Source: Caecitellus pseudoparvulus
Taxonomy: Eukaryota; Protista; Bigyra: Bicosoecida
Direction of reading: 5' to 3'
DNA: 64,000 nucleotides
NCBI GenBank assembly: GCA_965644315.1
Contig: CBFFRQ010000053.1
Span: 248,001-312,000 of the forward strand
In this document: piece after piece, positions 8,451 through 58,000 of the stretch
Numbering within the stretch: position 1 is the first letter of the stretch
How the letters are laid out: each line of letters starts with the position of its first letter
The notes under the pieces: model-generated
Seen by the model: only the letters and a program-made list of their open reading frames with translations
The model's database searches: none
Told to the model about the DNA's origin: nothing
Position numbers and translations under genes: made by a program

Positions 8451-8550
8451 GGCGCACCCTGGTGAACAAACTGCCAGGGCGGGGGGGGGCAGCTGGGTGG
8501 CTGCTGCGTTTTGGTGCGGTCTGGCGGCTGTGCGTGTGTCGCTGCATTGC

Positions 8551-14862: not shown

Positions 14863-14912
14863 CGGCCAGCCCGCCGCGTCCCCCTCGCAGCATGCATTCA
14901 CCCCGGATCCCG

Positions 14913-16004
14913 TCACAGGCGCTCATCCCCATCGTCGCCGCGCCCCCCCCACAGACCATGCAGCAGGTCTGCCGTCTGCTGCGGCGTCAAATCCCCTCGG
15001 GAGGGGGGGGTGTGTCCGCGCAGGCTGGGCGGCAGCGGGACGCCACCCTCCCCCCAGCTGCGGGATGACTCGTCCCAGTGCTCCTGGCGGTGGGCAGGCG
15101 CCTGTGCAGGGCGCCGGCGGGGTGCACTGCCCACGCCCCCCCCCCCTGTGAACGAGGCCTTGAGCAAGTACGCGGCGATGCCGACTGCCTGCCCTCCCAA
15201 GTGGGCGGCGCCGTCCACTGCCGCGCCGCCCCGAAGCATGGCCACAGTGAGGGCCACGTTCACAGCTGTGAGCAGCAGCATGGCGTGCGTGCCCTCCATG
15301 GGCACGAACATGAGGCTGATGCCCATGGAGGGGTTGGCCATTAACGCGTACTGGGCGACGGCAAAGACCGCCCCCGAGGCGCCCAGGCCCGGCGTCATGA
15401 CGCGTGCGCGCCGACAGACTGCGTAGGAGGCTAGTCCCCCCACGAGGGCCGCGACGTTGTACATGGCGAAGAACTGTGCGCCAGTCAAGGACATCTGCGG
15501 AGGCAGGAGGGGGGCAGTGCGGTGGGAGGTGTGCAGTGACTCCGCGCACGCTGCCCGACGCACGTTCATGCCGGGGTGCAGCAGCAGGGGCCCGAAGGAA
15601 TGCAAGGCCATCATGTTGAAGCCCAGGTGAAAGATGCCGACGTGGGAGTATGCAGAAGTCAGCAGCGTGTGCCACCGGCCTGCCTGCACGGCTGGGACCG
15701 AGGCCAGGGCGTGCCTGCGCAGCACGGCGCCCAATCTGGACGCAGCAGAGAAGTTCAGCTGGGACGCCTTCCAAGCCAGGAAAACGGCGACGTTGCACCC
15801 AGTGATGCCTGCAATGAGGGGGTAGCCGAACCCTGTCCCTGGCAAGCCCGGGACGAAGGAGGTGTGAAGCGGGGCTGGGCGCTGTGCCAGCGCCAGCCGG
15901 CTGCCCGGGTGCAGAGCCAGCCACACGCCAGCACCTGCAAGGGAACCAGCCCCACCAGCTGCAAGGAGCCCTCCTGATCTGGACCGAGCGAAGCCTGCCA
16001 GCAT
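14913..16004 (-). CDS. Rhomboid intramembrane serine protease (PARL/Pcp1-like)
   Basis: Motifs WHTLLTSAYSHVGIFHLGFNM, catalytic GASG and AAHLGG. In-frame GT-AG intron at 15495-15563. Presequence-like N-terminus. Confidence 0.88.
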   Translation of the reverse strand: MLAGFARSRSGGLLAAGGAGSLAGAGVWLALHPGSRLALAQRPAPLHTSFVPGLPGTGFGYPLIAGITGCNVAVFLAWKASQLNFSAASRLGAVLRRHALASVPAVQAGRWHTLLTSAYSHVGIFHLGFNMMALHSFGPLLLHPGMNVRRAACAESLHTSHRTAPLLPPQMSLTGAQFFAMYNVAALVGGLASYAVCRRARVMTPGLGASGAVFAVAQYALMANPSMGISLMFVPMEGTHAMLLLTAVNVALTVAMLRGGAAVDGAAHLGGQAVGIAAYLLKASFTGGGGVGSAPRRRPAQAPAHRQEHWDESSRSWGEGGVPLPPSLRGHTPPSRGDLTPQQTADLLHGLWGGRGDDGDERL

Positions 16005-32300: not shown

Positions 32301-32986
32301 ATGGCAGCAACGTCCGAAGGTCACGAGGCTGCGATGCAGAGAGTGCGAGCGCAACTCCGTTGGCTCGCAGCAACTGCTGTGCGGAAATTGCTTGCTTCGC
32401 TGCTTGGCGCAGATCAAGGACTTCTGCTTTGAGTCCTCGGGGTTCACTGACACGTTCACAGAATGGTCCAAGGAAAACGCGCACCGTATCGATCTCAGCA
32501 TGAAGGCGACAGAGCACCACCTGGACTACACTGCCATGCACCAAGAGGTAGGTGCTCTGTAGTCTCCGCAGCTGAGGGCTGGCTCATGAGCGACCACTTG
32601 CTCTGTGCGATGCCGCGCAGTTCGTGGAGGTGTTTGAAAAGCGCCTTGAAGACAGAGTGATGGAGGAGGGCATTTCAGTGGAAGACTTCTTCTTGTGGCT
32701 GAAGCACGACTTGGAAGAGGATCCGGTGTCCAACAACTCTTTTGTGGTGCGGCTGCGAGCTGTCGACGCACACTGCCTGGCCCTTGCGCACTGAGCGCAT
32801 GAATCCCTGCAGGTTGACCTGTTGCTGGCCATGTCTGACTTCGGCATCTTCATGCAGATGATGCGGAGGGCTGCCAAGGATGCGGCAGAGGCCGCTGCCG
32901 CGGCAGGCGCTAGCGAGGGCAAGGGAGGCGAGGCCTCCGACGAGCCGCCATCAGCCACTGAAGCAGCTTCTGAGTCCAAAAAGTAG
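32301..32986 (+). CDS. BART (ARL2/ARL3-binding) domain protein, 4 exons; missed by the ORF track
   Basis: Spliced translation MAATSEGHEAAMQR|IKDFCFESSGFTDTFTEWSKENA..EHHLDYTAMHQE|FVEVFEKRLEDRVMEEGISVEDF..|VDLLLAMSDFGIFMQMM matches the ARL2BP/CFAP36 pattern (E..L.YT.IH.EF...FE..LE; LL...DF..F..MM). All junctions are GT-AG. Confidence 0.8.
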
Positions 32987-33273
32987 CAAAGCTGGTCTAT
33001 TGTGGTCCTCATGAGCCATGTGCACGCTTGGTGCCAGTGGCCTTCACCAGTCGGTACAGGTTTGAACCCTGTGCCCGGTACTGAGGAAGCACGGCCGGGG
33101 ACCAGCCCAATGCAGAGCGTCGCGTAGCATGCTGGGAGTGGGGGCAAGTTGCCTGCATTGGCAGGGGGCCGGGCAGCGATGTGTCTACGCCTTGAGGCCA
33201 ATCCGGGCTCCCTTGCGACGCCAACACAGGCGGTGGTGTTGCAGCTTGTCGGCTGCATTGCGGTATCAGGGCT

Positions 33274-36200
33274 TCAAATACTCACTGCGCTGGACATGAA
33301 CTTCGGGTTCACGCTGTTGCATGGGAATCTGCGCGGCCTGCCATCGTTGGGCTCCACCAGCTCGTCTGCCGCCAAGTCCCGGCCAGGCAAAGGCAACAGT
33401 GGGATGGTGTCTCGCTGCGCGAGCGCATTCTGCGCATCGATTGCGTTCGAGAGCCTGCACAGATCCTCGCGGAACGTGTGCCACGCTGCTTTGCTCTCGC
33501 GCAATTGGGTCTTCGTTCCCGTGAGCAAGTGGTCAAAGTTGGCCATGAGCATGGGCTGGGCTTTTGCCGTGATCATGGCAATGCCGTTCATCTGGAAAGC
33601 AGTCTGCAGGCCGGCGAGGTTGCTGTGCTTGGGGTCATACGGCTCCAACTTGGATGCCGCCCAGCCCGCATCAGAGACGTAAGCAGACACCCGCCCAAAC
33701 TGCAGGTGGGAGGCAGTGACCTTCACAATGATGGTCGACAGCACTGTCACCAAGCTGGCACAGTCATGAATGTGGGGGAGCATGGTGCGGCTAAAGGCGT
33801 GCAAGCCATCGTCGAAGGCGTGCAGGTCGTCGTCCGCAAGCACCCTCATGCGGCACTCGTCACCTCGGCCGTAGTACGCCGCAACGTACTCAGACACAAA
33901 GTTGTGCACGATGCGGTCAAAGCGCCGGGTATCAGCACCCCAAGGGTACAACCACTCTGGCACGTCATCCATGCCTCGTGCAGCGATCTGGGCTGTCGCA
34001 TTGGCGAACACGACATTCTCGTACGAGTATCGGAAGGCCTGCTTCATTCCATTCCAGGACAGCGCAACAGCCCTGTGCAGCATGCCGTTGCGAGAGAGCA
34101 GCGTGGCGATGGAGCCCTTGTTGATCCACACTGTCTTGTACGTAAACGGGGTCAACAGGCGCCGCAGGGGGTGGGTTGTCGGCAAGTTTTCCCTGGTCGC
34201 CGTCACCGCCGCGTTGGACAGGGTAGCATGCAAGCCCACCAAGTGATCGCGCAGGGTCACACCAACGACCAAGCTCGACCTCCACACAAACTTGGCACGG
34301 TCCCACTCCAGCCCATCACGCGGGTTGAACCAGGCCCCTGCAGCGAGGCTTTCCGCGTTGGGAGCTGCGTTCCAGACGATGCCCACGACATCACCATTGT
34401 CGTCGAAGAAGGCTGCAGCGCCATAGCGCTCGAACGTGCCCCGTGTCTCCAGCCCAGACATCCAAGTGAAGTCTGAGACAAACTCGCAACCAGTCAAATC
34501 GCCTGGCGCCCCAGGCAGGGAGCCCCACTGCTTGCGCTGCGCAGGTGTGAGCCGGGTGATGGCATGGGCGCCCATGCCCACGAAGGCGATCTTGGCCACA
34601 GCATCATCGGTCAGCATCGTGGGCCAAGGCATCAGTGTTGGGGGGAGGCGAGTCTTGGCACGTGTGGAAGCGTCCAGCATGGACACGCTCTCGGCCGCGT
34701 CAGCGAAGGCCAGGTGCAAGTCAGCCTCTTGGGCATCCCCGAAGATGAGCGTGCTACGCAGCAGCTGCTGTGCAAAGTCCCCGAAGCCTTCTGAAAAGCT
34801 GCTCGAGCTGGCCCCAGCGTCCTCGTCCTCGATGGGGATTGGGACACCGAACACCGTCACCTGCTTCTTCAAGCGCCGGTGCCATCGGGGCCTGGGCACA
34901 ACACTGCCATTTGGCGTCGGGCCTTGGGCGTCCAGCACTCCCTTGGAGAGGGCTTGGTACAGCAGTTTGGCATTCAGGTCAAGCTTGTGAAACTTGGAGT
35001 TCAGGGCTGGGGAGCAGGAGTCAGCTGGCAGTGGCTTGGCTTCCTGTCGGGAGACCGGGAAGATGCCGTTGGGGCACGTAAAGTCTGCGGGCGCATCAAC
35101 GCCGCCAAGGGGGTCGATGTTGGCTGTTCCCCAGTTGCACAGGGGCATGTTCTCCAAGAAGCTCACACCCAGCCACAAACCAAGGCTTGCCACCATAACA
35201 GCAGCAGCGCCTGCAAGTATTGTCCAGCACGAACAGTCCGCGCGGAGACGACGGAACCTTCGAGACCGAGTTGGCGTCATCTGAACACTGACTTGTGCGT
35301 GGCCAGGCTTCCACAGGATGCGGCCGCCAGCCAAGATTCTCTGTGACGCAATGTTTGTTTGCTGCATCAAGTCGTCCATCACGGGGATGGCATGAATGAC
35401 TGCGGGGATGTACAGGATGCTGTCACCCAGCCTGGACAGCAGGTGGAAGGCTTGTCCGCTCGCAAGGTAGTTCGGCCAGAACAAATCAGCCACGCCCCAG
35501 AACCCTCCAATGAAGCCCAGCCAGAGGGCGAAGCCTTCAAAAGTCGGTGGCATCGCTCGCTGCAGGGGCCGAGGCATGCAGCCACGGCAGCGGTCCCACT
35601 GGCGCTCCGCATAGGCCTGGCGGGAATCATCGCCTCCGGCTTCGTCTGCGATGACTGGATCATCATACCCCTTGCACCACCAAAACCAAGCTACAGTGTA
35701 CATGACACACGCAGCTGCAGGCATGTAGTACATGGACGCGAACAGCTGTAGGTTGAAGTGGGGGTCAACGGCATGAGCATACTGAATCAGCAGCGTCACG
35801 AAGCCAAAGCTGGCCCAAATCGGCCACTCAGAAAGGGGTGCTGCATGCTTCATGACGGTACCGTCTTGTAAGGCGCCGCCTTGCACGACCAGCGGGCTGC
35901 CACTGCCCGATCGCAAATCAGAGTCAGCGTCGACGGGGGCAGAGCGCTCTGACTTCCTGCGACGCCCAGCGCCCCGCCCAGGAGATCTTGAAGGGCTAGA
36001 GTCGCTCATCGATGGCATGGTCTCGACACTGCGCTTGGTTGTAACGTGGGCCTGCGCAGCAAGAAGGCGCCGGCGCTGGCCCCAATACTGCACCGCCTGC
36101 AGGAAGATGCGGGCGTAGAACACTGCCGCCAGATTCTGCAGGTGGTAGAAGAAGACAGACTCATTGCCCAGAAAGTTCCACACGATTCCATTCATCCCTT

Positions 36201-37863
36201 GTGCTGCCAAGTACCCGACGTAGTTGCCAGTTGCAGGGCCAAATGTGCGGGTGCCCTGCAAACAACAGGTCACCACGGAAAGCCACGCAATGCAAGCAAA
36301 GCAGGCGCCCGTCCAGACCAACCAGCCAAAGTTGTCCATCACAGGGATATGGCTGAAATTATAGTCACCGTCTGGCGTCAGGGACCCATCGGGGAGGTAC
36401 CCAGGGGGCAGTTGAGGGGCAAAGGTATCCAGCAGAGTCATGACAGTTGCCTTGGACAGCTCACGCCCAGGGCAGCCACGAGTGGCCATGGAGGTGTTCA
36501 ATGAGCCCCCCGCCCACGCAGCCTCGGGGCCATTCCATGTCAAAATGTCTCCCTGCGTGTCCCGCGTTGGGTCAAACTCGCCTGCACGCTGCGCGCTGTT
36601 GCCAGGTCCACCGAAGACGACCTTGTCTTGGTTCGCGGTGCCAATAAAGTACACGATGGGCGTACCCGCCGGGTACGTCACCGTTGTCGGGGACCCGAAC
36701 CAGTTTGGGAACGACGCGTGGAAAGGGGTGTCACGCACAGTGCTGAACCAGGTCACCGCAGGGTTCACTCGAGCACTCTCCAAAAGGTATGCAGGCTTGT
36801 TTGCGTTCCACAGTGGCATGTGATACCGCACGTCTGATCTCACACGCTTGAACAGGGCACTTGCCAGGGAGGATGAGCCCAGGAGGCCGGCGAACAAGAA
36901 GCCGTCCGACAGCTGCCGCAAGAAGTCTTTCACGGCGCCGTCCACGGCGGCGGGAGGGAGGGGGCTCCCGAACGCCTGTACATAAGCATCCTGGAAGACG
37001 CCTTTTGCTCGCTGCCCTACGGGGGATTGAGTGACCAGTTCAGTCGTCAGCTTGCGGATGTCACGGACGGCACCCAGCCCTGCCATCTCAGTCAGCGGCC
37101 ACAGGGACGCATCCAGGACGCACGCTCCAGGGGCCTTGTCCATGTACGGCGCGATGGCATCCACTTGCTCCTGTGTCAGTGCAAGTTCAAACATGCGCTC
37201 GAAGACTGTGGCCACAAGGGTCTTCTTCCAAGCTACATCCATCAGCTTGTCGGCCTGTTCAGCTTGCCCCAGCGCGTAGAGCTTCTCCGCCTGCTTCCGC
37301 AGGTCTTCCTGGGCTGGGAGCATACTGAGCTTAAATCCGCGCGGCGTGACTTGCAAACCCTTCACAAGCTTGGAAATGGTGGAACGAATGCGCGTGTGAT
37401 TGGCACCGTTGGGCACGAAAATCAAGGTATCAGAGGGCAGGCAGCCAGGCGAAGGCTGGAAAGCCCCGAGCAGCCACTGGCGCTGCTGCTGAGATGCCAT
37501 GACGGCCGTGACATCCTCATGCCGAGTCAAGGCGACACCGTGAAAGAACGGCACCATATCTCCGTTGATGCTCTGCAGACGCTGCATGACGCGAACCTGG
37601 TCACTCTCATCAGCCACGAAGACCGGCATGAACAGCAGGAAGCCAGAGAGGGCCCCGACCACCTTCTCAATGGGTGAAAATGGGAAGGCTTTCATCCAGG
37701 GGTTCTTCGCGATGGTGATGTGGATGTCTCCGTGCAGTGCAAGGAGCTGCGTGCGCCCCGAGTCGGAGCTTAGCAGTCCAGCATAGAGACACAGCACCAG
37801 CACGATGCACCAGCACAGGGAAAACTTGTTCAGCACCCGATTGGGGTGCCATTCCTTCCCCAT
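33274..37863 (-). CDS. Fusion protein: signal anchor + CYP74-like cytochrome P450 + multi-pass TM module + lipoxygenase
   Basis: P450 motifs: ExxR (ESAR, aa 362), FDPTR meander, WNGPE...RGCPG heme Cys464. LOX motifs: WDRAKF, HLVGLH (H1207/H1212), AT.ENL...HPL.RLL.PF...T..IN, YPWGAD, ASH (H1386) and terminal SAVSI. About 8 hydrophobic segments at aa 512-903. Uninterrupted 1529-aa ORF. Confidence 0.85.
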   Translation of the reverse strand: MGKEWHPNRVLNKFSLCWCIVLVLCLYAGLLSSDSGRTQLLALHGDIHITIAKNPWMKAFPFSPIEKVVGALSGFLLFMPVFVADESDQVRVMQRLQSINGDMVPFFHGVALTRHEDVTAVMASQQQRQWLLGAFQPSPGCLPSDTLIFVPNGANHTRIRSTISKLVKGLQVTPRGFKLSMLPAQEDLRKQAEKLYALGQAEQADKLMDVAWKKTLVATVFERMFELALTQEQVDAIAPYMDKAPGACVLDASLWPLTEMAGLGAVRDIRKLTTELVTQSPVGQRAKGVFQDAYVQAFGSPLPPAAVDGAVKDFLRQLSDGFLFAGLLGSSSLASALFKRVRSDVRYHMPLWNANKPAYLLESARVNPAVTWFSTVRDTPFHASFPNWFGSPTTVTYPAGTPIVYFIGTANQDKVVFGGPGNSAQRAGEFDPTRDTQGDILTWNGPEAAWAGGSLNTSMATRGCPGRELSKATVMTLLDTFAPQLPPGYLPDGSLTPDGDYNFSHIPVMDNFGWLVWTGACFACIAWLSVVTCCLQGTRTFGPATGNYVGYLAAQGMNGIVWNFLGNESVFFYHLQNLAAVFYARIFLQAVQYWGQRRRLLAAQAHVTTKRSVETMPSMSDSSPSRSPGRGAGRRRKSERSAPVDADSDLRSGSGSPLVVQGGALQDGTVMKHAAPLSEWPIWASFGFVTLLIQYAHAVDPHFNLQLFASMYYMPAAACVMYTVAWFWWCKGYDDPVIADEAGGDDSRQAYAERQWDRCRGCMPRPLQRAMPPTFEGFALWLGFIGGFWGVADLFWPNYLASGQAFHLLSRLGDSILYIPAVIHAIPVMDDLMQQTNIASQRILAGGRILWKPGHAQVSVQMTPTRSRRFRRLRADCSCWTILAGAAAVMVASLGLWLGVSFLENMPLCNWGTANIDPLGGVDAPADFTCPNGIFPVSRQEAKPLPADSCSPALNSKFHKLDLNAKLLYQALSKGVLDAQGPTPNGSVVPRPRWHRRLKKQVTVFGVPIPIEDEDAGASSSSFSEGFGDFAQQLLRSTLIFGDAQEADLHLAFADAAESVSMLDASTRAKTRLPPTLMPWPTMLTDDAVAKIAFVGMGAHAITRLTPAQRKQWGSLPGAPGDLTGCEFVSDFTWMSGLETRGTFERYGAAAFFDDNGDVVGIVWNAAPNAESLAAGAWFNPRDGLEWDRAKFVWRSSLVVGVTLRDHLVGLHATLSNAAVTATRENLPTTHPLRRLLTPFTYKTVWINKGSIATLLSRNGMLHRAVALSWNGMKQAFRYSYENVVFANATAQIAARGMDDVPEWLYPWGADTRRFDRIVHNFVSEYVAAYYGRGDECRMRVLADDDLHAFDDGLHAFSRTMLPHIHDCASLVTVLSTIIVKVTASHLQFGRVSAYVSDAGWAASKLEPYDPKHSNLAGLQTAFQMNGIAMITAKAQPMLMANFDHLLTGTKTQLRESKAAWHTFREDLCRLSNAIDAQNALAQRDTIPLLPLPGRDLAADELVEPNDGRPRRFPCNSVNPKFMSSAVSI

Positions 37864-46093: not shown

Positions 46094-49000
46094 TCAAGCC
46101 ATTCCAAACCCTTCGCTGCCTTCACGGATGGCAGTGAGCAGGCGCGACTGCAGCACATCCTCGCTGCTATACTGAGGCAAGTCCAGCTGGTTGAAGCATG
46201 TGTGGGATGCTGGCAGGCGAGCATCAGTAGCCCCCGACATGCGGTGGATGTTGAACTTCTGCAAGCCTCGCATGCCTTGCAGGGCCCCAAAGCCCTCCAG
46301 TGGCACTTTGCTGCTGCCCGTCACAAACATGATGAAGCGGGCCTTGTCCTGGTCATTGAGGTTGCTCAGGAACGCCCACAGCCACTTGATGACGGGGTCC
46401 TGCGGGGAGAAGCCAACGTACTCAGTGTTCTCCTGCAGGTCCGCCATGTCGATCTTCGGCAGCCCAGAGACGAGCAGCTCCAGCTCGCTCTCGCTGAAGA
46501 TGCTGATGAGGTGGTAGGGAACTAGCTCATGGAAGCTGGACAGGAAGGCGTCAATCTGGCGCTGAATGGCAAAGGTCATCTTGTGCTGCGTCAGCAGTTC
46601 AACATACTGCATCTTGTTGGCGTCAGTGACATCCATGTCCTCCCCGCCCGGAAGCAGCTCCACTGTGCGCTTGTCGCCAAAGTGGTCCACAGACATGGAG
46701 AACGTAAGCCCCAGGTACAAGTCGTCGATGGACATGTTCAAGACATTCACCAGATTCTTGTAGTACTCTGGGTCGATTCCTTCCAGGTCGTGGAACGTAA
46801 TGGGCACCCCCAGCATGTGCTTGTAGAATGAGCGTGTGAAGTGCACGTCCAGTAGCTCGCCATCCAGCACCGCCTTGCCAACCAGACGGCCCGCCAACTG
46901 GAAGTATGCCAGATGATCTTCATTCACCCAAGACTGCGGGTTGGGCTGGAACGTACCGCCGTCAGCTGAAGGGATGAAGAGCGCCTTGTTCGGGTCCATC
47001 ATCTCCCTGGCCATCAGCGCGTACCACTCGCGCCGCAAGCCGCCAGCGTCCACACCCTCTTCGCCCAGGAAAGTCACTGAAATGGGCCCAAACATGTCCG
47101 CCGCGCTGCGGCTTCGCAAGTCAGAGAAGGTGTCCTCAAAAACGCGGCTGCGGTTAACACGCAGCTGCACACCTCTGGAAGAGCCCTTTTGTTTTCGCAC
47201 CTCTGCCATGCGCTGCCGGAAGTACGTGCGCTTGTTGTCGAAGTCGAGAAATACCCGACAGCTGGGCACCTGCACCAGCGTGGCAAAGTCGCTTGAGAGG
47301 AGGGCGGGCATTACGCGAAGCATGCCATTCAGGACTTCTGCCGTTCGCTCAGTGAAACTCGCCAAGCGCCGCCTCGTCACACGCTGCTGCCTCATCATGG
47401 CAGCATTCACCTTCACCACCCGCGCAGGCGCCTGCCGGCTGCTCGCACTGCTCTTGGCTTGAGGAGTGGTCGCGGAGCCCTCAGCAGCGTCCTCTTCGTC
47501 CTCCTCCCCCGTGTCCAGCACTGGGTGGCTCAGGAAGAAAGCCCGCACAAGTGGCAGGAAGCGATCAAACACGTGCCTGGGAAGGGTCACCTTTCCGTCA
47601 GTCACATCACCTTGGTCATCCTCGGCCTCCGCGTCGTCCGCTCCGCTGCTGCCGCTTGATGACATCGGCGCAGCCATGCTGCCCAGCATGGGAGTGGCGC
47701 CAGCGGCGCCTTCGGCGCCGAAGGCTGCAAATTGGCCTCCTGCCAGGAAAGCCTCCATGTCTTCACTCTGACTGCGCCTTCGTCCAGGGTGCATGGGGCG
47801 ACGCTGCGCTACAGCTCCCATGCCCAGTTGTGGTGGAGCAGTGGTGGCTTGCCCGAAGCGCACCCGAACCTCGCCACTGCTCGCTGCTTCACCCTCGGCA
47901 TCATCACCATCATCGGTCTCTGCACCGGAGCCTCCCTTGCTCAAGAACTTGCCTGTGGCTTGCAGGGCGTCTGCGAGCGCATCCCAAGTGGGCTCCAACA
48001 GAGCACTGAGCTGGGCATTCAAGACTCCACTCACTTCCAGCGGTACAGAAGGGTGAGGTGTGGAGGGGGCGGACGTGAGTGGTGCCAGCTCGCATGAAAC
48101 TGCGTCACGCACTGCTGCCTCAGATACCATCTCAATCCCGCCAAGGAAGCGGCTTTCAGCCCGAGCAAGCCACGGACCTGCCGGCGGTAAGCTTGTTGCA
48201 ATTGGAGGTAGTGCTGGGTCTGCGTTGTTCACAAGCTCCCTGGCCACGTCAGCAAACTTGTGCTGCCCTTGAATGTCGACGTTCCAAGACGCGCTCACCT
48301 CAGAAGGCGGAGAAGAATCCTCTGCAGCTGACAGATCCGGCACATCCACAGCTGCGTGCGCAGCCATCGGGATCTGGATGAAAGAAGTGTCGGCGGTAGC
48401 ATCTGTTGCCGGCATCACTGCTGAGCGAGGAAGCGTGACAGAGGGGACCCGGAGTGGCACCAACACGCGCAGGGTTTGCAGGAGAGCCTGCAGCGTGATT
48501 CCTGGTGTCGTTGCAGATTGCGAAGCCCAAGTCTTCATGGTCACCGCGCCCCCAGACGCAGATGCCACGGCGATGGTCTCAGACAGCCGGCCGAGATGCA
48601 GAAGTGCTCCACGGGCAGCTGCTTCGACTGCCTTGCTGATGCAAGCCATGACGCGGCGCTTGTTTCCCGGGACGATACACAGCAAGCGGAGTGCCCGGAT
48701 CACCCGGCCAGTTGCACGCTTGGAGTTGCAGCCAGGCTGCAGCAAGCTCATGACCAGCGCACGGGCTGCATCTGCGCTGACCAGGGGCGGGCACACCAGT
48801 ATGCCACTGTCGGGGGCACGCCGGCCCAGCGCAGAGCTCCTGGGGAACGACGAGATGTCCACGGGTGGCAGGCACTGCTCAACAGCCGGCGGGGCAGCTG
48901 ACGGCCGTCGCGTTTGTTTTGCTGTGATGTGTGCCCTCAGTTCTCGCATTTCAGAGGGCAGCATTGCCGAGCCGAAGCCTGCATGCAGCAGGCTTTCGGG

Positions 49001-52000
49001 GTGCCGCACCTTGAGATGGCCAATGAAGTTCTGGCTGCGATAAGATGGATCCCCCCCCGGCATGGCACTGCAGATAGGACAGACAACTCTTGCTGCGCTG
49101 CCGTTCAAGTGATGGCGCATCGCGTGCCTGATCAACTCGCCCCGCCCAAGGTGCACCTTGGCAAGGTTCGCCGACGAGTCGCCCGAGACATCCAATAACG
49201 GGTTTGTGTAGCCCTGTTTGGGTTCCCACCACATGCGTGGCATTCCCGAGGCTGAAACTACGACTTCGGAACGGTCCCGATCTTGAGGGCCTGTGGAAGC
49301 GCTGACCGGGCAGGGGCGAGCGTCTGGTGTCGTGACGGCGTTGGCAGATGCCCCGCTTTGCCGCGTGGCGAGCGCAGACACGTCAACCTGCTGGCGGTTG
49401 GCCACTGACCCAACCAGTTCGTGAACGCTTGGAAGCACAGGTGCAGCGGAGCCGGTTCGAGATTGTGAACCATCAACTGTCGCCAGAAGTCGACCGAGGC
49501 TCGTGGCTGATGCGCCGGCGATGGGCGCCCCAAAGTCCTCTCCGCCTCTGCCAGCGACGTGCATGCCGTACTGGGCAGACTCGGAGCGCAGCATTGGCGT
49601 GGGGTCGACTTGCTGGATATCCCCACCACTAGACTGAGGGGTGATTGGCGGAGGGGGCCTGGTTGGAGCCTTCATCTCGGCGAGAGGTGCTCCCATCTCA
49701 AAGAGTAGGTGTCGCCAGCGCTGGGCGGCTGCGATGGCGCTCGACATGTGGCCTGGTGGAAAGAAGGTAAAGCGCAAGTCGCCGGTGCCCATGTCCTCTG
49801 GTGCAGGTCCCAACGACTCCAAACCAACCCCGCATGCCTTGGCATCCTGAACCACCATGCTTCTTGCAAGCAGGCGCAGGGTGGGCAAGAGGTCCAGTGG
49901 AATCCGCACGCCAGTGTTGGACATGTGCACCAGGGCAGCCCGCAACGTGAACATTTCGCTAGGTAGCAAGGTGAACAAAGGCACCCCCCCAAGGCTCTTT
50001 CCAGTCGCCCCCGTGGATGCAATGCGCCGGCATACAACGGACACAACGTGGCGTAGCGCTGCTACGTGCAGGAAGCTGCGTACCCGGTGCGCACGTCGAT
50101 TCGCAGCATCCAGCGCCAACCACTCCAAGGGGCGCAGCGCCCAGTTCACTGCCTCCAGCAACGCCTCTGACGCCTCCGTGGAATGCGAGAACGGCGCCTC
50201 TGCTAGGCACTGCAACAACCTGTCAAGGCCTGAGGCATCGGATGACCACATGTGCTGGAGAATGCTCCTGGGCCGGACACCCTCGCGCAGTGCTGGAGAG
50301 GCGGGCGAGCTGCCCAGCGATGGCGAAGTGGTGTGGCCAGCGATTGGCCGTTTCACACCGCCCGACCGGGGCACAGGCAGGGTCACTGGCGAGGGTAAGC
50401 CGCCCGAGCGTGTGAGGGCTGCGGTGACAGCAGCTGCTGCAGGCCTGCGCCACCTCCCCTCCAGCAGGGCTGCAACAGAGAAGGGTGTTGCGTGAATGAG
50501 GGCCCGAAGCAAGGCCAGCGCACGCTCGGCTACTGTCACGGTGAAGTACCGCGGCTGGGTGCTGTATGAAACACTTGCCAGCAGGCTTCCAGAATCGACT
50601 CCCGCCGAGGGCTGCTTGCCAACGAGCGAAGAAGGCATGCTGCTGCCACTCTGGAGTGCTGCGGCGGTGGCAGCGGCCACCTGCACTTCATCATGACTGG
50701 GGGGCACCAACTTTGCAGCCCGCAACACATGTGCAGCCCTTGCCATCGGGTGCAACGGGTCCTTCACGTGCACTGCGGCAAGAGCTGCAGGCAAGCCCTC
50801 CAGCACGCTGCACAGCAAGTCGACAACGGTGACTGCTGCCCCGGGTGCTGCGACCAAGGACGTCAGCACTTGCTCGTACATGCCAGCTCGCGCAGCCCCT
50901 GGCTGGAAAAGCAGACCCAAGAGTGCCGAAATGTTAGTCACAGACACGCCGTGGACAAGCAGACTGCCTGCCACATCATCAGAAGCTGATCTCCGTGAAT
51001 CGGTTAGGACAAGCATCGGGAATCGTCCACGCGCTGGCATGGGCACAGTGGGCACGACGTCTTGAAGTGTCGGTGCATCCCACGCATATGCTCTCGGCGT
51101 CTCGGTGTCGAAACCAAGTGGCACGCTGTCATTGCGGTAGTCAGGGCCTCGTTGGACTCGCCCAAAGCGCGGGCCGTTGGCGAGCTTGGGGAAAAAGCCA
51201 GGCACCACTCCATTCGTGACTCCACCTCCTTGCTGCTGTGTCAGGGCATGCAGCGGGGGGTCGTTGACACCAGAGCCTGCTTCACTGGTGAGGTCTGTGA
51301 TGCGGACAACTCCACGAAGGTTGGGTTGAGACACGCTGCCAGACGAGCGGGCACCGCTGACTTGGTCGTGGTCACTGCCAAACGTACTCGCAAGGCCCAG
51401 TGGGTCGTACTCGTGCTCTGAACTCCCACGAGACCCCAGCATGCTCATACCCTGCATGGTGTCAATCCTGGCATGAGCCACGTACGCCCCCGCAGGTGCC
51501 TCGCTCCCATCTCGAGCCTCCCAAGCATCTGTCAGCAGCTCTGCAGCACCTGGCAGCAGCACTGCCTCCGCGTCTTGCACACTCAACTGCGACACCTCGC
51601 GTGGCACGGACAGGGTCGGGTTTCGTCCGGCAGCGGACACTGCCCTCACACATTTTGCCAGGGTCTGCGAGAACTGCCTCCACACTGGGCCGCCTTCAGC
51701 ACCAGCAGAATTCAAGACTTCGTGCCCGGCCGCAGCCACGACCATGCGATGCATCCTCCCAAGAGTCGTAGCCACTGCCACAGGCAGGGACGCGTCGCCA
51801 ACTCCTGGGATGGGTAATGGCAGCTCCGCTACAGAGGCACCAGGAGAAGCAGCCGCACCCCCTTGCGGCAGTCGATGTCTTGCGAGAATATCGTGCTGAG
51901 GAGCTGGCGCTCCGCTCGAACCTGACCCAGCATGCCCTGCTGCTACTCCTTGTGACCCTTGCCAGGCGGCGGCTTGGGCCATTCGGGAGGAAGCTGCAAG

Positions 52001-55000
52001 GGCTGCGGAAGTTCGCACTGACTCCGCCTCAGCCTGCAGCTGCCTCGGCAATGCGGACACTTGTTCAGGGGACAAATTCAAGAGCACGTCTGCCCTGGCA
52101 TCCTGGCCGACAGACTCCAGCAACATCAGAACTTCCGCAGTGCCTTGCTCGCCAGTTGCCCCACCAGATGGGCGCGCCTCGGTCTGCTGCCCAGGCAATG
52201 CTGACAAAGTCTCCACCAGCACGGCATCCGGCAGTGTCGCAAGCACAGCGGCATCCATATCTGGTGGCAAGGTTTCCACACCAACTTGCTGCATCGCAGA
52301 AAGAACTCGGGCAGGAATAGAGGGTGCTTGCTGCGTTGCTCCGCCTGTTGCTGTCCCGGCCATCGTGCCAAGCTCACCCCGCCCGCTGTGACCATCTTGG
52401 AGCTGCCCGGCAATCTGCATCACCTGAGTTGCAGCGCTGCCTCGACCTGTCTGTGCCGTCGATGCGGGTGCCCCTGCACGCGCTGTCAGGCGCGCCGGCT
52501 CGGCCTGTGGAGGGGTAGACCCAGCCGGAGACGGGGGCGCCCCCTGCTCAGTGCTTGCGCTTTCAAGCGGAGCGGGCAACTTGACGGGTCTGGGTCCACT
52601 TGAGGCCTCCTCCTCCACGACTCCCGAGCCACGCACGAGTGGGCTTGTGCTGAGGGGGGTCGGGCTAGGCAGCGGCACGGGGGGCAGCCCCTCCACGTGG
52701 TGTGACGACAAGAACGCCGCATGTGGTGTGGAGGCAAATGTATACCAGCTGGGTGGGACGGCAAGTGCGGCAGCCGCCAACGCTGTTGTCAAGCCTGACG
52801 CAAACGACTGCGAAGGTGATACACCTGCTGCCACGTCCGGCTGCAAGCCATCCGTGAGGGAGTTGACGCGAGACAACGCTGCACCCACGCGGGGACCGCG
52901 AACCCGCACCATGTGCCATGTGGACCCGCTCCCCAGCACTGGCATGTCGCAATCAGCGCTGCCAATCCTCGGCGATGGCCAAGATCCTGGACGGCGCGCT
53001 TCGCTGCCTGCCACACGCAAAGCAGAGTCGCTGCCCACTTCAATTCGAGGCAAAGCGAGGCTTCCAGGCACTTGCCCGTGAGGGAAAGCAGCTCCAGTGA
53101 AGCCACTCTGAGATAGCAACCTCAGGAAGCGGTGTTCGAGCCAACCTGGGAGGCATTCGTGCACCAACAACCCCAGGGCCTCCTCGTCTCCAGAGATGAA
53201 GACTCTGTTGGAGCCTTGGCGGGCCGCTGAAGCATTACTGACAGTGGGCAGGCCTAATGGCCCAAACTCGCGGAGCGGCGGCATGAGCAGCACGCCTCCC
53301 ACAGGGACCAGGGGGGTCGTCGCCAGCAGCTCTTGGCTCCATCGCCGAGAAGCAGTCAGACTGCCGCCGCCCGTGGAGGTTCCAGGATACCCAGAAGGCA
53401 GCACAAGCGCTGCCAACGCAGGTACAACGCGAGAGTGAGAGCCAAGGAATGACGTCGCACCACTTGTTCGGGCCGTGTGCACTGATCCCGACAGGGTGCC
53501 ATGGCGTTGTGGAGAGTCCGCAGCGGCAAGGGTCAGCCCAAACACAGGCAGCACCGAGGAGCTTGCAGCGACAACGGCATCCTGCGCAGCTTCACTGCCG
53601 TGCTCCGCACGCACGCGATTCAGGACAGCGATGGCACTGTGGTGAGTCTCTACACCTCGGCTCAACATACTCTGGGCAGCGGAGCTGGTGAATATGCCGA
53701 GAGATGGGCCGGATGACGGAGCCTCCTGGAACGAAGAGGTTGGCCCTCTGAGATGCAACAGGTCCCCCCGCAAACCAATTTCGGCACTTGCTCCGCTCCA
53801 CATGGCAGGCACTCGGAGCGCTGCGGTGGCGCGCTCCACTGCTGCTGTTCCACCGTCCGCGCTTCCAGGGGCAGCATCGGAACTACTGCCCCGGCGTGCT
53901 GTGATACCGGTGCCTCTCTCAGGGGCACCGGGGAGCCCCTGGCCCATAGCTTGCCAGACGTCAGAGAGCTGGATGCCGGCTCGCTGCGTCCCCCGCCTCC
54001 TCCGAGAGGAGTTTCCTCGACGTCGCGTACGCTGGCGAACGTTTTCCCCTGGCATGAAGATGTCGCCCCACTCGCCGTCTCCAGGCACTGCTGACATGGC
54101 TGTGCTGCCGCCGTCGCCATCCCCCTGCCCGAGAATGTCCCCAGCAGCGGAACCGGCGACACTTGCAGCATCTGCTGAAGCGGATGCGGAGCGACCAGAG
54201 GCAGCTCGCCGCTGCCGAAGGGCGCGGAAGGTGCTGTCGTCCTCAGCTAGCAAGGTGAGCTGTACGCGCTGCAGACTGCCGGACGACATCATGCGCAAAT
54301 GAGGGTTGCTTGCCAGAGCCATCGCGAGGCGCGCCGGGCGCTGGCCCTGGGAACTCCCAGCACTCTGGGAGAACTCCGGTGAGGAGCGAATCTCACGCAT
54401 GTGGTCCATCACATTTGCCATGAATGATTGCAAGGGGTTGCTTGTAGTGGACGCCGCACTTTGCCGCGCTTCGGGAGACAGCCGCCCAGAAGCCCTCGTC
54501 CCGTAGTGCATGTCATCTGCCTCGTCCTCGTCTGGCTGCGAAAACTGCCGACTGTGCATGCTTGCAGGGAGCAGGCCTGGCCACAGGGCCGACGAACTCA
54601 GCGACCCTGGCGGCTGCTGTGGGCCGCGATGAGCTTGCATGGGCTCGCGGGCAGCGGAGGAGCCCGCTCTCTCGTGGGTGGGCGCATGGTGCTGAGGAGC
54701 TGAGGCAATGCCGACCTCGTTGCTCGGTGGGGCCGCTTCGAGATCAGTAGCACTCAGAATCTGCCTCAAGGGTGGCCCCCGATTCAAGTTTGGCTGTGGT
54801 GGCCCATCGTGGACTCCCGAGCTGAGACCGCCCACTCTGAATGCGTCGAGGCTCAGCATCGTAGGCACTCCATCCGGTGGTTGCTGGGCAGAACCGAACG
54901 AGAGTCGAGTGACGGATCCTACCGGTTGACTTGAATGCTGAGAACTTGCAGGGTGTGGCCCGCCTGCGGTGCCCGCAGAGTTCCTGGCCGCTGCTTCAGA

Positions 55001-58000
55001 CAGCACGTTGTCGCCTCCGAGCAAACCTGCAAAGGAGTCGGGAGGCACGCCCCCAGCCGTCGGCCCTTCATCGATCGCCACTGGACTCGCAGCTGCTCCC
55101 AGCGTCAGCGGGGAGGGAACTCGACTTTCTGACACCCCTGGCGCATTTGAGCTTGGCTCTGGACTGGGGTCCAGCGAGCGAACGTCGGAGCCAGGCCCAG
55201 ACTGGGGGCTGGAACCTGGCTGAGCCCTTGCCTGCTGAGACGCTGACGCAACAAAGGGCCTCATCACGACACTGAATGCAGGCTCCTCTGGGGGTGACGT
55301 GTGCTCTCGAACCTCCCTCTCCAACACGAGGTCAGAGTCTTCTTCCTTATGCTCAGGGTCGTCCTGAAGTGAAGCTTGGTGAAGCGGTACAAGCAGCGTA
55401 GGTGACTCGGCCAACGATCCAGACCCTGAGTCTGAACCGCTTCCTAGACCTGAGTCTGAGTCAGAATCTGATGATTCTGACTCCGCGCCTGAGCCTGGCT
55501 CACTGCGCGTTCCATCTGCTGACCAGCCGTCCTCGCTTAAGTCGCCGCCAAGTACTGCTTCAAGCTGCGAGAATCCCAGCGAGCCAAGCAGGTGGTTTAC
55601 AAAGGCTTGCCCAGCAGCGCCACCCAAGACCCTGGCCACGACAGGGGCCGTATCAACTGCCCCAGACGTGACTTCTGCAGTGGAACCTGTCGCCGGATCT
55701 GACACTTCGATCACGACAGTCCCCGTGACAGTGCCGTCCTCAGCTGACGCGCCAGGTTGGCTGGCATGCGTGGAGGTGCCGAACCCCCCCCCGCTCTCGC
55801 GCAGCACAGCTTGCAGGCCCCCCGTGCTCTCATCATCGCTGTCACCCTCGCCCAACCTGAAGAAGCCGACGTTCCGGGGACGCCGAACCTCTGGTTCCTC
55901 GCCGTCACCACTTGTCATCATCACTGCGTCTGGCCCCGGCTGCTGCAGCTGCAAGTCATCATCGTCAGAGAGCGCTTCGACGAGCACGTCATCGCCGCCT
56001 TCATCGTCTTCGTCCTCGCTGTCTGCATCATCGGCACCTTCCCCAGTCGTTTGGGCGGAATCGGGGAACGCCTGGGCTGCGTTTGGTCGTTCAGAGCCCA
56101 ACCTAGCGTCATCCTCCTCTGCTTCCGCATCTGACTCGTCGTGCTGCCCAACGCTGAAGGCAACACTGTCTGCGCTGTCTGCACGACGAAGTGCGACAGA
56201 CCCCAGGCCGCTGGAACCCGGCGGTGAAGCCCCCGCCTCCCCTGTCCCAAGATTGCTCAGGGCGGCGGGAAATGCATGGGTTTGTGGCAACCCAGACTCC
56301 ACCTTCGGGGCTGCACTGTGCCGGTTGGAGTCCCTTGAAGTTCCTGTGGGTGTAAGGGTATGACCTGCCCGCGCATCTTCCGGAGAGTGGTGCTGGCGAA
56401 GGGGTGCAGACCTGCGACGCTTGCGCGCAGCCCCATGCCCCTTCCGTGGCTCCGTCTGGGGCACTCGAAGTGCCCGTGACCGCACCCGAGCGTGGGCGAC
56501 ACTCGGCAAGTCCACGACGTTGGATGTGGCTGCAGCAGCTAAGCAAGCGGCAACCATGCTCGTCAAGGCAAGCAAACCTTGCTGACCTGATGGAGCAGCA
56601 TGAAACAGTTTCTGTGTCTCAGCATCCACTTGGCACACGTCCGCTGAAAGCAAAGACTGCACAAACTGAGCTGCGTTGTACAATCCGAGTCTGGAGTGTG
56701 GTTCGACTTGCAGAGTCTGTGCCTTGGTGGACTTCTGCAAAGTTGCAGTAAGCGTGGCGAGCAAGCCAGTGACAGCGGAGAGCGCCTCAGGGGCCTCAGG
56801 TAAATCTGGTTCAATCGTAGGGATCAAAGACATGAGCATGGAAAGGGCGCCTCGGGCATGTGCCTCGGCCGGCAAGTACTGCGGAGACTGCCACACGCGG
56901 GAGAGACTGGCAAGCGGTGACACGGTGCCCCCCGGCGGCACAGCCAAAGAGCCTGAAGGCATCAAGGCAAGGTTCACCTCGGCGTTGCTAGTTGCAAACA
57001 GTGCTGCAAGGCTCCTGCCAATGTTTCTGTGGCCGACAGATGAGCTCTCCAACTTCAATGGGACATCGGTGAGCACTGCCTTGGCCAGGTTGCACAAGGC
57101 CTTCACGCCTGCAGCTCGCAGGGAGGCGTGCAGGTACGCAGGCGGAATGTGGAGCGCGGGCATGGCCTCCATCATCTTCTGCACAAGCTCCTCTTGCTTC
57201 AGCTCGCCCCAGCGAGCCCAAACAGCCAGCTGCCGGAGTATGTGGTCGAGAAGGAGAACAGCATGCAGATCAGACAGCCTCGCAAAAGCAAGGAGCATGC
57301 CTTCCGCCATGGAGCTTGTTGCCTGTGAGTGACAAATGTGCCATGAAGCCCTCGCTCGTGCCACCTGCTGCACCTGGGCGTTGTAAACCGTGGAGTGTGT
57401 GACCTGCTCGAAGGATGCAGCTCTGGGCAAGGGCCACTGTGGAGACACTGCGTCGGCAGGGGCGCACCCAAGGAGGCCAATGTCATCCCAGCCGAATGCT
57501 GGGAGCACTGTGCTGAGGATTGTCGTCAAAGCAGGATTTGCCCCGGCCAAGTACTCGGTAAAGCCATCCACCAGCCCAACGCCTAGTGCAGCGAGGGTTC
57601 CTTGCAGTTTTCGTGTAGGCACCAACATGGGCGAAGGCGGCGAGCCAGCTGCTGCGCCCTGAGCCATGCACTTTGCGTGATTTCGTCGAGCTGCATCCAG
57701 GCCAGCTGTCAATGCAGCCATTCTCGCAGGGGATGGGACGGGGTCCCTGAAGGGGTACGCCCTAAGCCTCCCTGGGACTCCCGTCATGGACACCCCGTCG
57801 GGGAGTGGCAAGTCGACTGTTGCTGGTGGTGAGGGTGGGCTTGTCCTCGCCTTGGCAGTTGCTTTGCCGTGCTTGCTTGGCTGATCGCCTGCTGAAGAGT
57901 TCATGCAGAAGGGAGGCAGGTCAGCCTGCGCAGCACACACAGCGAGGAGCCTCCAAGCACTGTCGACCAGAGGGTGAGATTCAGGAAAGAATGCCAAGAG

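What the first reader, a model, noticed from the sequence alone, without database searches (positions are those of the whole stretch)
33274..37863. One-gene oxylipin pathway: CYP74-like P450 + multi-TM module + lipoxygenase fusion
Seen in sequence: one uninterrupted 1529-aa ORF with an N-terminal anchor, a complete P450 (ExxR, meander, heme Cys464), ~8 TM segments and a LOX catalytic domain ending in the iron-ligating terminal Ile. Established knowledge: LOX makes fatty-acid hydroperoxides, and CYP74-clan P450s (allene oxide synthase, hydroperoxide lyase, divinyl ether synthase, epoxyalcohol synthase) consume them without a reductase. The natural fusions I know of are catalase-like AOS-LOX (corals, cyanobacteria) and heme dioxygenase-P450 (fungal PPO). 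I do not know a described P450-TM-LOX architecture. Inference: this is a membrane-embedded, substrate-channelling oxylipin synthase, possibly coupled to a transporter or receptor.
Basis: partly seen in the sequence, partly recalled or inferred. Interest (0 to 1): 0.95.

Follow-up and report, generated by a model that had tools for sequence, protein, structure and literature searches.

The report
Membrane-anchored P450–lipoxygenase fusion enzyme
A single gene of a marine protist joins a divergent cytochrome P450, an eight-helix membrane module and a lipoxygenase. The same undescribed fusion occurs in several distant protist groups and probably makes oxidised-lipid signals or defence compounds in one step.

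Summary
Window 33274..37863 (-) is one uninterrupted 1529-aa ORF. It has a signal-anchor, a P450 fold (residues about 39-487), eight hydrophobic segments (509-903) and a complete lipoxygenase without a PLAT domain (940-1529) that ends in Ile.

Pfam sees only the lipoxygenase. The P450 needed a family profile (265 PDB P450 chains, best E 5e-14), relatives that pass PF00067, and an AF2 model (pLDDT 92.7; Z 27 to bacterial P450s).

The fusion is not an assembly artefact. Independent metagenome assemblies carry the same ORF and the same flanks. A paralog in the same genome has the same layout. Thirty-nine fetched proteins carry both domains, including transcript-derived ones from a cryptophyte, a diplonemid and a dinoflagellate, and a chlorarachniophyte protein.

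"CYP74-like" is supported only as an analogy. The nearest relatives are bacterial-type P450s. The I-helix acid is lost and the Cys loop is enlarged where I recall CYP74 having its insertion.

The lipoxygenase keeps four of its five iron ligands. The Asn position is deleted across the subfamily.

Nothing supports a transporter or receptor role for the membrane module. I found no description of this architecture in the literature. The most likely function is a self-contained lipoxygenase-to-P450 oxylipin synthase. I rate it a new variant of a known kind.

The parts
33274..37863 (-). Whole gene: 1529-aa ORF plus stop codon, with the layout P450 - 8 TM - lipoxygenase
   Evidence: The same ORF with the same flanks is in independent assemblies L014 and L015.
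37756..37842 (-). N-terminal hydrophobic signal-anchor (residues 8-36)
   Evidence: Hydropathy peak 2.29. Modelled as a helix at high pLDDT. Conserved C19, L26, Y27, G29, L30.
36403..37749 (-). Divergent cytochrome P450 domain (residues 39-487)
   Evidence: AF2 pLDDT 92.7. VIA-align Z 25-27 with rmsd 3.3-3.6 A over about 340 aa to solved P450s. The profile hits 265 PDB P450 chains. ESM feature score 0.97 to P450 clusters.
36874..36906 (-). I-helix motif DGFLFAGLLGS (residues 320-330). The acid of the acid-alcohol pair is Gly329; the alcohol Ser330 is kept.
   Evidence: Family consensus is FAGxxGT.
36769..36780 (-). K-helix ExxR (E362-S-A-R365)
   Evidence: E362 and R365 are invariant in 45 sequences. 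Aligned to the K helix of XplA and CYP125.
36466..36576 (-). Meander FDPTR (430-434) and enlarged Cys-ligand loop W443...R462-G-C464-P-G466
   Evidence: R434 is invariant and C464 is at least 90% conserved. The loop aligns in full only with BcmD-type P450s. 'LSWNG' aligns with the canonical L-x-F-G.
35155..36339 (-). Family-specific membrane module: eight hydrophobic segments at about 509-541, 549-567, 571-591, 681-700, 704-728, 776-802, 805-830 and 876-903. Long basic loops lie at 592-680, 729-775 and 831-875.
   Evidence: Family-averaged hydropathy. Loop charge bias. No Pfam or Atlas match.
33277..35046 (-). Complete lipoxygenase catalytic domain without a PLAT domain (residues 940-1529)
   Evidence: PF00305 above cut-off. 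Profile E 1.4e-32 to ALOX12. Stand-alone bacterial and cyanobacterial relatives of about 510 aa cover the whole domain.
34228..34245 (-). Iron ligands H1207-x4-H1212 (HLVGLH)
   Evidence: Invariant in 33 sequences. Aligned to H360/H365 of ALOX12.
33691..33708 (-). Third His ligand H1386 in the motif HLQFGR. A two-residue deletion removes the canonical Asn/His fifth ligand. Q1388 and G1390 are conserved.
33277..33279 (-). C-terminal Ile1529, whose carboxylate is the iron ligand in lipoxygenases
   Evidence: The profile aligns end-to-end with the ALOX12 C-terminus.

Best explanation
This is one real gene for a membrane-integral, two-enzyme oxylipin synthase.

The C-terminal lipoxygenase has no PLAT domain. 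It is proposed to add O2 to a polyunsaturated fatty acid, free or still in a membrane lipid, and so make a fatty-acid hydroperoxide.

The N-terminal P450 has lost the I-helix acid used for O2 activation and has an enlarged Cys-ligand loop. It is proposed to use that hydroperoxide directly, without a reductase. It would rearrange or cleave it, giving an allene oxide, epoxy-alcohol, divinyl ether or aldehyde.

The eight-helix module holds both catalytic domains at the same face of one membrane, next to the lipid substrate.

Shown here: the three modules, their catalytic motifs, the single reading frame, and conservation of the fusion across distant protists, including on transcripts.

Inferred: the substrate, the product, independence from a reductase, hand-over between the domains, and the topology.
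For: Single gene:
- One ORF with uniform codon-position GC.
- The identical 1529-aa ORF with the same neighbours is in independent assemblies.
- Full-length homologs have 51% and 31% identity.
- A paralog with the same layout lies in the same genome.
- In this genome, 2 of 2 lipoxygenase matches and 2 of 2 family-P450 matches lie in the same two open frames.

Conserved fusion:
- 39 of 157 fetched proteins carry both domains.
- Pfam itself calls PF00067 plus PF00305 on P0070 and P0071.
- Named members come from Rhodomonas and Sulcionema (transcripts), Amorphochlora, and Effrenium (MMETSP transcript).
- A second architecture has no TM linker, which links P450 and lipoxygenase independently of the membrane module.

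P450. The ExxR / R434 / R-x-C464 motifs are conserved. The I-helix acid is replaced by Gly family-wide, and the Cys loop is enlarged.

Lipoxygenase: with three His ligands and the terminal Ile invariant.

Same-side placement: eight conserved hydrophobic peaks, an even number. Loop K+R counts are 6 on the catalytic side against 267 on the other, over 18 members.

Established knowledge: lipoxygenase products are the substrates of the heme enzymes fused to lipoxygenases in corals and cyanobacteria, and of CYP74, CYP8A and CYP5A P450s, which need no reductase.
Against: - No biochemical or expression data for this gene.
- The P450 is not a CYP74 relative. It keeps the I-helix Ser/Thr and a canonical R-x-C-x-G pocket, so ordinary monooxygenase chemistry is not excluded.
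- An enlarged Cys loop also occurs in BcmD-type P450s, which have no known link to hydroperoxides.
- The canonical fifth iron ligand of the lipoxygenase is deleted, so activity is not assured.
- The docking test of the two domains gave no answer.
- Two bacterial loci with stand-alone relatives of the lipoxygenase showed no P450 neighbour.
Confidence: 0.6

Rival explanations
1. The P450 is a conventional monooxygenase that depends on a redox partner. It would act as a fatty-acid epoxygenase or hydroxylase on the same lipids, or on lipoxygenase products. The fusion would then co-localise two oxygenases rather than create a hydroperoxide relay.
For: The nearest sequence and structure relatives are ordinary bacterial monooxygenases. 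The I-helix Ser/Thr and the R-x-C-x-G pocket are retained. BcmD-type P450s share the long Cys loop.
Against: The I-helix acid is Gly throughout the family. No reductase or ferredoxin domain lies on the chain. The family is fused to a lipoxygenase in two independent architectures.
Confidence: 0.2
2. One catalytic domain is inactive. The lipoxygenase is the likelier candidate because it lacks the canonical fifth iron ligand. The protein would then act as a membrane sensor, receptor or carrier for lipids or lipid hydroperoxides, with the membrane module as the effector.
For: The Asn/His ligand position is deleted, and in the window's clade the following residue is Arg. The membrane module carries conserved polar residues and long basic loops.
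Against: The deletion is shared by the whole subfamily, including stand-alone bacterial enzymes. Three His ligands, the terminal Ile, HPxRRLL and the INxG motif stay invariant, which fits purifying selection on catalysis. The membrane module matches no transporter or receptor family and is only 18% conserved.
Confidence: 0.1
3. The N-terminal domain is a true member of the CYP74 clan (allene oxide synthase, hydroperoxide lyase, divinyl ether synthase or epoxyalcohol synthase).
For: In the family consensus the W-to-Cys spacing is 16, against 7 from the canonical F to Cys. That is an insertion of about nine residues at the place where I recall CYP74 having one (the CYP74 side is from memory). 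The I-helix acid is lost. At-AOS has the joint-highest Foldseek TM-score, 0.51.
Against: No CYP74 chain is among the best 60 PDB hits of either profile or the VIA top 50. The pocket reads PRGCPG, not the Arg-less CYP74 type. There is no I-helix Asn.
Confidence: 0.08
4. Artefact: two or three neighbouring genes have been run together by misassembly or a lost stop codon.
For: No reads or cDNA could be laid on the locus.
Against: The same frame is open in at least four independent assemblies and in homologs of 31-51% identity. Transcript-derived members span all the modules. Codon-position GC is uniform.
Confidence: 0.02

Closest known systems
Catalase-related allene oxide synthase-lipoxygenase fusions (Plexaura homomalla and other octocorals; cyanobacterial counterparts such as Acaryochloris and Nostoc). 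PDB 3dy5, 3fg1.
   Same: An N-terminal heme enzyme that consumes hydroperoxides is fused to a C-terminal lipoxygenase on one chain. The lipoxygenase of 3dy5 and 3fg1 matches the family profile at E 1e-26. The same logic applies: oxygenate, then rearrange.
   Different: The heme domain here is a thiolate-ligated P450 fold, not a catalase-like fold. An eight-helix membrane module separates the domains, in place of a short linker with a PLAT domain. The lipoxygenase has no PLAT domain and no Asn ligand.
Fungal dioxygenase-P450 fusions (Ppo / linoleate diol synthase, DOX-AOS, DOX-EAS). Reviewed in PMC13049297 and PMC10813956.
   Same: A fatty-acid dioxygenase is fused to a self-sufficient P450 that transforms the hydroperoxide.
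   Different: The fungal dioxygenase is a cyclooxygenase-like heme peroxidase, not a non-heme-iron lipoxygenase. The domain order is reversed, with the P450 at the C-terminus. The fungal enzymes are soluble or peripheral, with no TM module.
CYP74-clan P450s (plant AOS, HPL and DES; EAS of algae and Metazoa). PDB 3dsi, 3dsk.
   Same: They are the proposed functional analogues, because they consume lipoxygenase hydroperoxides. They share the lost O2-activation acid and, as I recall it, an insertion of about nine residues in the Cys loop.
   Different: No detectable closer kinship than to any other P450. This family has a canonical R-x-C-x-G pocket and keeps the I-helix Ser/Thr. CYP74 enzymes are separate proteins, not fused to a lipoxygenase.
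Bacterial and cyanobacterial lipoxygenases without a PLAT domain ('mini-LOX'), such as Cyanothece CspLOX2 (PDB 5med) and unnamed Leptolyngbya and Pseudomonadota proteins (P0165, P0163).
   Same: About 30% identity over the whole 590-aa domain. No PLAT domain. The same H-x-[QH]-V-G motif and the same ...SVSI C-terminus.
   Different: These are stand-alone soluble proteins of about 510 aa. No P450-like neighbour was found at the two loci I examined.

Membership tests
Cytochrome P450 superfamily (PF00067) | P450 fold | tested here: met
   AF2 model with pLDDT 92.7 and pTM 0.90. All 500 or more Foldseek hits are P450s. VIA-align Z 25-27, rmsd 3.3-3.6 A, about 340 aligned residues.
Cytochrome P450 superfamily (PF00067) | Pfam gathering score on the protein itself | tested here: not met
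   No PF00067 hit even at E 10. It is met by family relatives: P0094 at 55.7 bits, and P0113, P0080, P0071 and P0070. These relatives match the family profile at E 1e-19 to 1e-24.
Cytochrome P450 superfamily (PF00067) | ExxR, the meander Arg, and the Cys thiolate ligand in F/W-x-x-G...R-x-C-x-G | tested here: met
   E362, R365 and R434 are invariant. R462 and C464 are at least 90% conserved in 45 sequences. They are in register with solved P450s.
Cytochrome P450 superfamily (PF00067) | Binds heme and gives a 450-nm CO spectrum | not testable with these tools
   Needs expressed protein.
CYP74 clan | Closest relatives by sequence or structure are CYP74 members | tested here: not met
   The best matches are CYP125, CYP105, CYP150, CYP107, CYP109, EryF and GcoA. 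At-AOS appears only at Foldseek ranks 40 and 50.
CYP74 clan | Insertion of about nine residues in the Cys-ligand loop | tested here: inconclusive
   In the family consensus the W-to-C spacing is 16, and in the window protein it is 21, against 7 for the canonical F to C. BcmD-type P450s have a similar loop. The CYP74 spacing is quoted from memory.
CYP74 clan | I-helix without the acid-alcohol pair and with a catalytic Asn; Cys pocket without the Arg/His (NKQCAGKD type) | tested here: not met
   The acid is lost (Gly329) but Ser330/Thr is kept. There is no Asn. The pocket reads A-P-R-G-C-P-G. The CYP74 motifs are quoted from memory.
CYP74 clan | Turns over fatty-acid hydroperoxides without O2 or a reductase | not testable with these tools
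   Needs an enzyme assay.
Lipoxygenase (PF00305) | Pfam gathering score | tested here: met
   30.3 bits for the whole protein and 33.6 for the domain alone, against a cut-off of 23.6. Profile E 1.4e-32 to ALOX12.
Lipoxygenase (PF00305) | Iron ligands: H-x4-H, a third His, and the C-terminal Ile carboxylate | tested here: met
   H1207, H1212 and H1386 are invariant in 33 sequences. The chain ends ...SAVSI and aligns to the last residue of ALOX12.
Lipoxygenase (PF00305) | Fifth ligand, Asn, His or Ser four residues after the third His | tested here: not met
   A two-residue deletion removes it (H-L-Q-F-G against H-A-A-I-N-Q-G). Gly at +4 is invariant, and +2 is Q or H in most members. The deletion is shared by the bacterial stand-alone relatives.
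Lipoxygenase (PF00305) | N-terminal PLAT / beta-barrel domain (classical eukaryotic lipoxygenases only) | tested here: not met
   There is no PLAT hit. The domain is co-extensive with bacterial lipoxygenases of about 510 aa that lack PLAT. PLAT is not required for family membership.
Catalase-related AOS-LOX fusion | Catalase-like heme domain N-terminal to the lipoxygenase | tested here: not met
   The N-terminal domain is a P450 fold.
Fungal DOX-CYP (Ppo) fusion | Animal-heme-peroxidase-type dioxygenase domain followed by a P450 | tested here: not met
   There is no peroxidase domain. The dioxygenase is a lipoxygenase and lies C-terminal to the P450.

The most novel reading that the evidence does not exclude
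P450-TM-LOX proteins are a widespread and so far undescribed family of self-sufficient oxylipin synthases of marine protists. They occur in cryptophytes, chlorarachniophytes, diplonemids, this probable stramenopile and, without the TM module, in dinoflagellates.

Both catalytic domains may sit on the non-cytosolic face of the membrane. The enzyme would then convert membrane PUFAs directly into luminal or extracellular signals or defence compounds.

It may also supply the unidentified hydroperoxide-transforming step of protist oxylipin pathways, through a P450 lineage that reached CYP74-type chemistry independently.
Probability: 0.35. Interest if true: 0.85.

Novelty: new variant of a known kind. 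Interest (0 to 1): 0.75.

Why it matters
Two natural fusions of a fatty-acid dioxygenase with a hydroperoxide-converting heme enzyme are known: catalase-like AOS-LOX and fungal DOX-P450. Both have been key systems for understanding oxylipin biosynthesis. A third solution, P450 plus lipoxygenase, would show convergent evolution of the same two-step logic. It would also add a new P450 lineage for hydroperoxide chemistry, and it would be an integral-membrane lipoxygenase.

The family is present in several ecologically important protist groups, whose oxylipins are implicated in grazing defence, bloom dynamics and coral symbiosis. As far as I know, the enzymes downstream of the lipoxygenase in these groups are largely unidentified. 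Database entries for the family read "hypothetical", "uncharacterized" or "Alox5".

The genes have few or no introns in this genome, so domain constructs can be made and tested directly.

Tried and rejected
- **Direct Pfam and single-sequence PDB searches of the N-terminal 520 aa.** They found nothing, only chance kinase hits at E about 1.
- **AF2 with the 5-sequence alignment.** The model was unusable (pLDDT 48). I replaced it with a 45-sequence alignment.
- **Complex prediction, P450 residues 87-495 against lipoxygenase residues 940-1529.** The result was 'no answer', score 0.01. This is neither for nor against docking.
- **The search for related loci in bacterial and archaeal species genomes.** The first alignment was too diverse. 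A closer alignment found no relative.
- **A bacterial operon link between stand-alone relatives.** Two lipoxygenase loci (L010, L011) have no family-P450 neighbour. The contigs of stand-alone P450-like proteins were too short to judge.
- **The membrane module.** No Pfam family and no Atlas cluster.
- **Earlier findings of this scan.** Nothing near the locus or by words.
- **Literature.** Seven full-text searches found no P450-lipoxygenase fusion.
- **The 224-aa ORF that starts 15 nt after the stop codon.** I judged it non-coding. Its codon-position GC is 0.48/0.67/0.67, it is low-complexity, and it has no Pfam hit.
- **The paralog's probable upstream exon.** Only the unspliced piece L007:5434-6756 was used.
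Full report
**1. The observation**

Window 33274..37863 on the minus strand is a single ATG-initiated ORF of 1529 codons. An in-frame stop lies two codons upstream of the ATG. GC content at codon positions 1/2/3 is 0.60/0.48/0.72 overall and nearly the same in the three thirds of the gene. This fits one coding unit.

The neighbours are eukaryotic: a bromodomain/PHD protein, a MORN-repeat protein, Noc2 and a giant HECT ligase. The genome (G000) is 30.6 Mb in 215 contigs. It carries a tandem 18S array. Its HSP90 is most like those of oomycetes and diatoms, at 74-75% identity, with no close named relative. The host is therefore probably an unsampled, GC-rich, intron-poor stramenopile. I could not name it.

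**2. The C-terminal domain is a lipoxygenase**

- Pfam PF00305 scores 30.3 bits against a cut-off of 23.6.
- A 5-sequence profile reaches E 3e-16 against human ALOX12.
- A 33-sequence profile reaches E 1.4e-32. It aligns from the first His helix to the very last residue of both proteins.
- H1207-x4-H1212, H1386 and the terminal Ile are present. The three His residues are invariant in the 33-sequence alignment.

The canonical fifth ligand is an Asn or His four residues after the third His. It is removed by a two-residue deletion: H-L-Q-F-G here against H-A-A-I-N-Q-G in ALOX12. This deletion is a trait of the whole subfamily. It also occurs in stand-alone proteins of about 510 aa, including one from Leptolyngbya and one from a Pseudomonadota MAG, which cover the entire 590-aa domain at about 30% identity. 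The domain is therefore a complete lipoxygenase of the bacterial type, without a PLAT domain.

**3. The N-terminal domain is a P450, but only remote methods show it**

Pfam finds nothing, even at E 10. A single-sequence PDB search gives noise. Four lines of evidence, drawing partly on the same family alignment, then agree:

- **(a) Language-model features.** They place residues 40-500 with 'cytochrome P450' clusters at a score of 0.97.
- **(b) Exhaustive profile search.** It finds 376 cluster representatives. The more distant ones pass Pfam's own PF00067 threshold, for example P0094 at 55.7 bits. Two of them carry PF00067 and PF00305 together.
- **(c) Family profile against the PDB.** A 45-sequence profile hits 265 P450 chains, best E 5e-14.
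- **(d) Structure.** With that alignment AF2 gives pLDDT 92.7. Every Foldseek hit is a P450. VIA-align gives Z 25-27 and rmsd 3.3-3.6 A over about 340 residues.

E362-x-x-R365 and R434 are invariant across the family, and R462-G-C464 is at least 90% conserved.

**4. Is the P450 CYP74-like?**

Not by descent. The best matches are bacterial-type P450s: CYP125, CYP105, CYP109, EryF and GcoA. CYP74 allene oxide synthase appears only at Foldseek ranks 40-50. It is absent from the top 60 of both profile searches and from the VIA top 50. The pocket reads A-P-R-G-C-P-G, which is canonical.

Two features do point away from ordinary O2 activation:

- The I-helix reads F-A-G-x-x-G-(T/S), so the acid of the acid-alcohol pair is Gly in the whole family.
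- The Cys loop carries an insertion. The family motif L-S-W-N-G aligns with the canonical L-x-F-G. The Trp-to-Cys distance is 16 in the consensus and 21 in the window protein, against 7 in ordinary P450s.

As I recall it, this is where CYP74 enzymes have their nine-residue insertion. That comparison is from memory and was not tested here. BcmD-type P450s have a comparable loop, so the feature is suggestive and not diagnostic.

**5. The middle module**

The module is only about 18% conserved, with a few recurring motifs. It matches no Pfam family and no Atlas cluster. I find nothing to support a transporter or receptor.

Eight is an even number, so the P450 and the lipoxygenase would sit on the same side of the membrane. 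Across 18 family members, the internal loops on that side hold 6 Lys+Arg in total, and the loops on the other side hold 267. By the positive-inside rule, both catalytic domains would be non-cytosolic. This is an inference from charge counts. The same-side loops are also very short, so I rate it low.

**6. The fusion is real and widespread**

- Near-identical 1529-aa ORFs occur in four independent assemblies. Two of them were fetched and have the same flanking genes.
- Full-length homologs have 51% and 31% identity.
- The genome holds a second copy, on contig C25, in an open frame listed as 1792 aa and 1796 aa. It has the same layout and a longer linker.
- All lipoxygenase matches and all family-P450 matches in the genome lie in these two open frames.
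- Among 157 fetched proteins, 39 carry both domains, in two architectures. One is P450-TM-LOX ending ...SVSI. The other has an N-terminal extension, then P450, then LOX, with no TM linker; most of these end ...SVAV.
- Named members are Rhodomonas abbreviata (MMETSP transcript), Sulcionema specki (transcript), Amorphochlora amoebiformis (GAB5370760.1, 'hypothetical protein') and Effrenium voratum (MMETSP transcript; UniRef A0AA36MUZ2, 'Uncharacterized protein').

Transcript-derived members show that single mRNAs encode the fusion in relatives.

**7. Mechanism**

The most economical reading is a lipoxygenase-to-P450 relay. The lipoxygenase makes a fatty-acid hydroperoxide, and the P450 rearranges or cleaves it without a reductase. 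The model for this comes from three known systems: catalase-like AOS-LOX fusions, fungal DOX-P450 fusions, and CYP74, CYP8A and CYP5A enzymes. The membrane module would place both domains at the lipid source.

What is shown: the domains, their motifs, the conservation and the exclusive co-occurrence. What is inferred: the substrate, the product, reductase independence and hand-over between the domains.

The main rival is a conventional monooxygenase P450. A second rival is an inactive lipoxygenase in a sensor-like protein. The docking test of the two domains returned no verdict and is not evidence either way.

**8. Novelty**

Seven full-text searches found the coral, cyanobacterial and fungal fusions but no P450-lipoxygenase fusion. 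A 2025 study of Symbiodiniaceae lipoxygenase candidates (PMC12586643) does not mention a P450 domain in the passages I read. The library is incomplete, so absence is not proof.

The proteins are in public databases, but those with a name are called 'hypothetical', 'uncharacterized' or plain lipoxygenase. I rate this a new variant of a known kind, namely dioxygenase plus hydroperoxide-converting heme enzyme. It has a new heme partner, a new integral-membrane format, and a broad distribution among protists.

**9. Limits**

- No expression data for this locus.
- No structure for the lipoxygenase or the membrane module, because the fold jobs were exhausted.
- No CYP74 sequences were available for a direct profile comparison or a tree.
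- The organism is unidentified.
- The paralog's probable 5' exon was left unjoined.

Noticed in passing
G000:C25 = L007 1615..6993 (-), plus ORF 6584..7702 (-): Paralog with the same P450-TM-LOX layout and a much longer linker (650 aa between the domains in P0023, against 453 in the window protein). Its first 90 or so residues (anchor and start of the P450) lie in a different frame upstream, so there is probably one short intron or a frameshift. The public gene model P0023 (1739 aa) starts downstream and lacks them.
   Followed up: partly
L007 versus P0167 (CAE7253517.1): The paralog matches a protein annotated 'Alox5 [Symbiodinium sp. KB8]' almost residue for residue where the two align (93% overall; the rest is three gaps that look like wrongly predicted introns). 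That protein sits on an 11.6-kb contig. A 30.6-Mb, 62% GC genome is not a Symbiodinium genome, so that assembly probably contains DNA of this organism (co-cultured or contaminant).
   Followed up: partly
window 32584..33258 (-): A 224-aa ORF starts only 15 nt after the lipoxygenase stop codon and is called as a gene in the metagenome assemblies. Its codon-position GC (0.48/0.67/0.67), its low complexity and the lack of any family match suggest it is not coding (probably 3' UTR).
   Followed up: partly
window 46094..63952 (-): An uninterrupted 5952-aa ORF ending in a HECT ubiquitin-ligase domain (E 6e-94). The first 2984 residues or so match no Pfam family.
   Followed up: partly
window 1..16000 versus the rest: GC content is 69-73% in most of the first 16 kb (0.67 at 10-12 kb) and about 60-66% afterwards. 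The shift is unexplained.
   Followed up: no
L011 (Logan ERR1883822 contig) 765..4875: Bacterial-looking operon: a stand-alone lipoxygenase without a PLAT domain (P0164), then an EF-hand protein, then a cNMP-binding patatin-like phospholipase, with overlapping start and stop codons. This looks like a possible lipase-plus-lipoxygenase module.
   Followed up: no
G000:C81:462535-498043: At least five tandem 18S rRNA genes spaced about 8.45 kb apart. The 18S match is only about 1697 nt long.
   Followed up: no
P0070, P0071, P0074, P0079, P0100, P0152 (dinoflagellate-type members): A second architecture has a 200-480-aa N-terminal extension with no Pfam match in the three members scanned (P0070, P0071, P0074). 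It has no TM linker, and most members end in Val (...SVAV) rather than Ile. As I recall, manganese lipoxygenases also end in Val.
   Followed up: no
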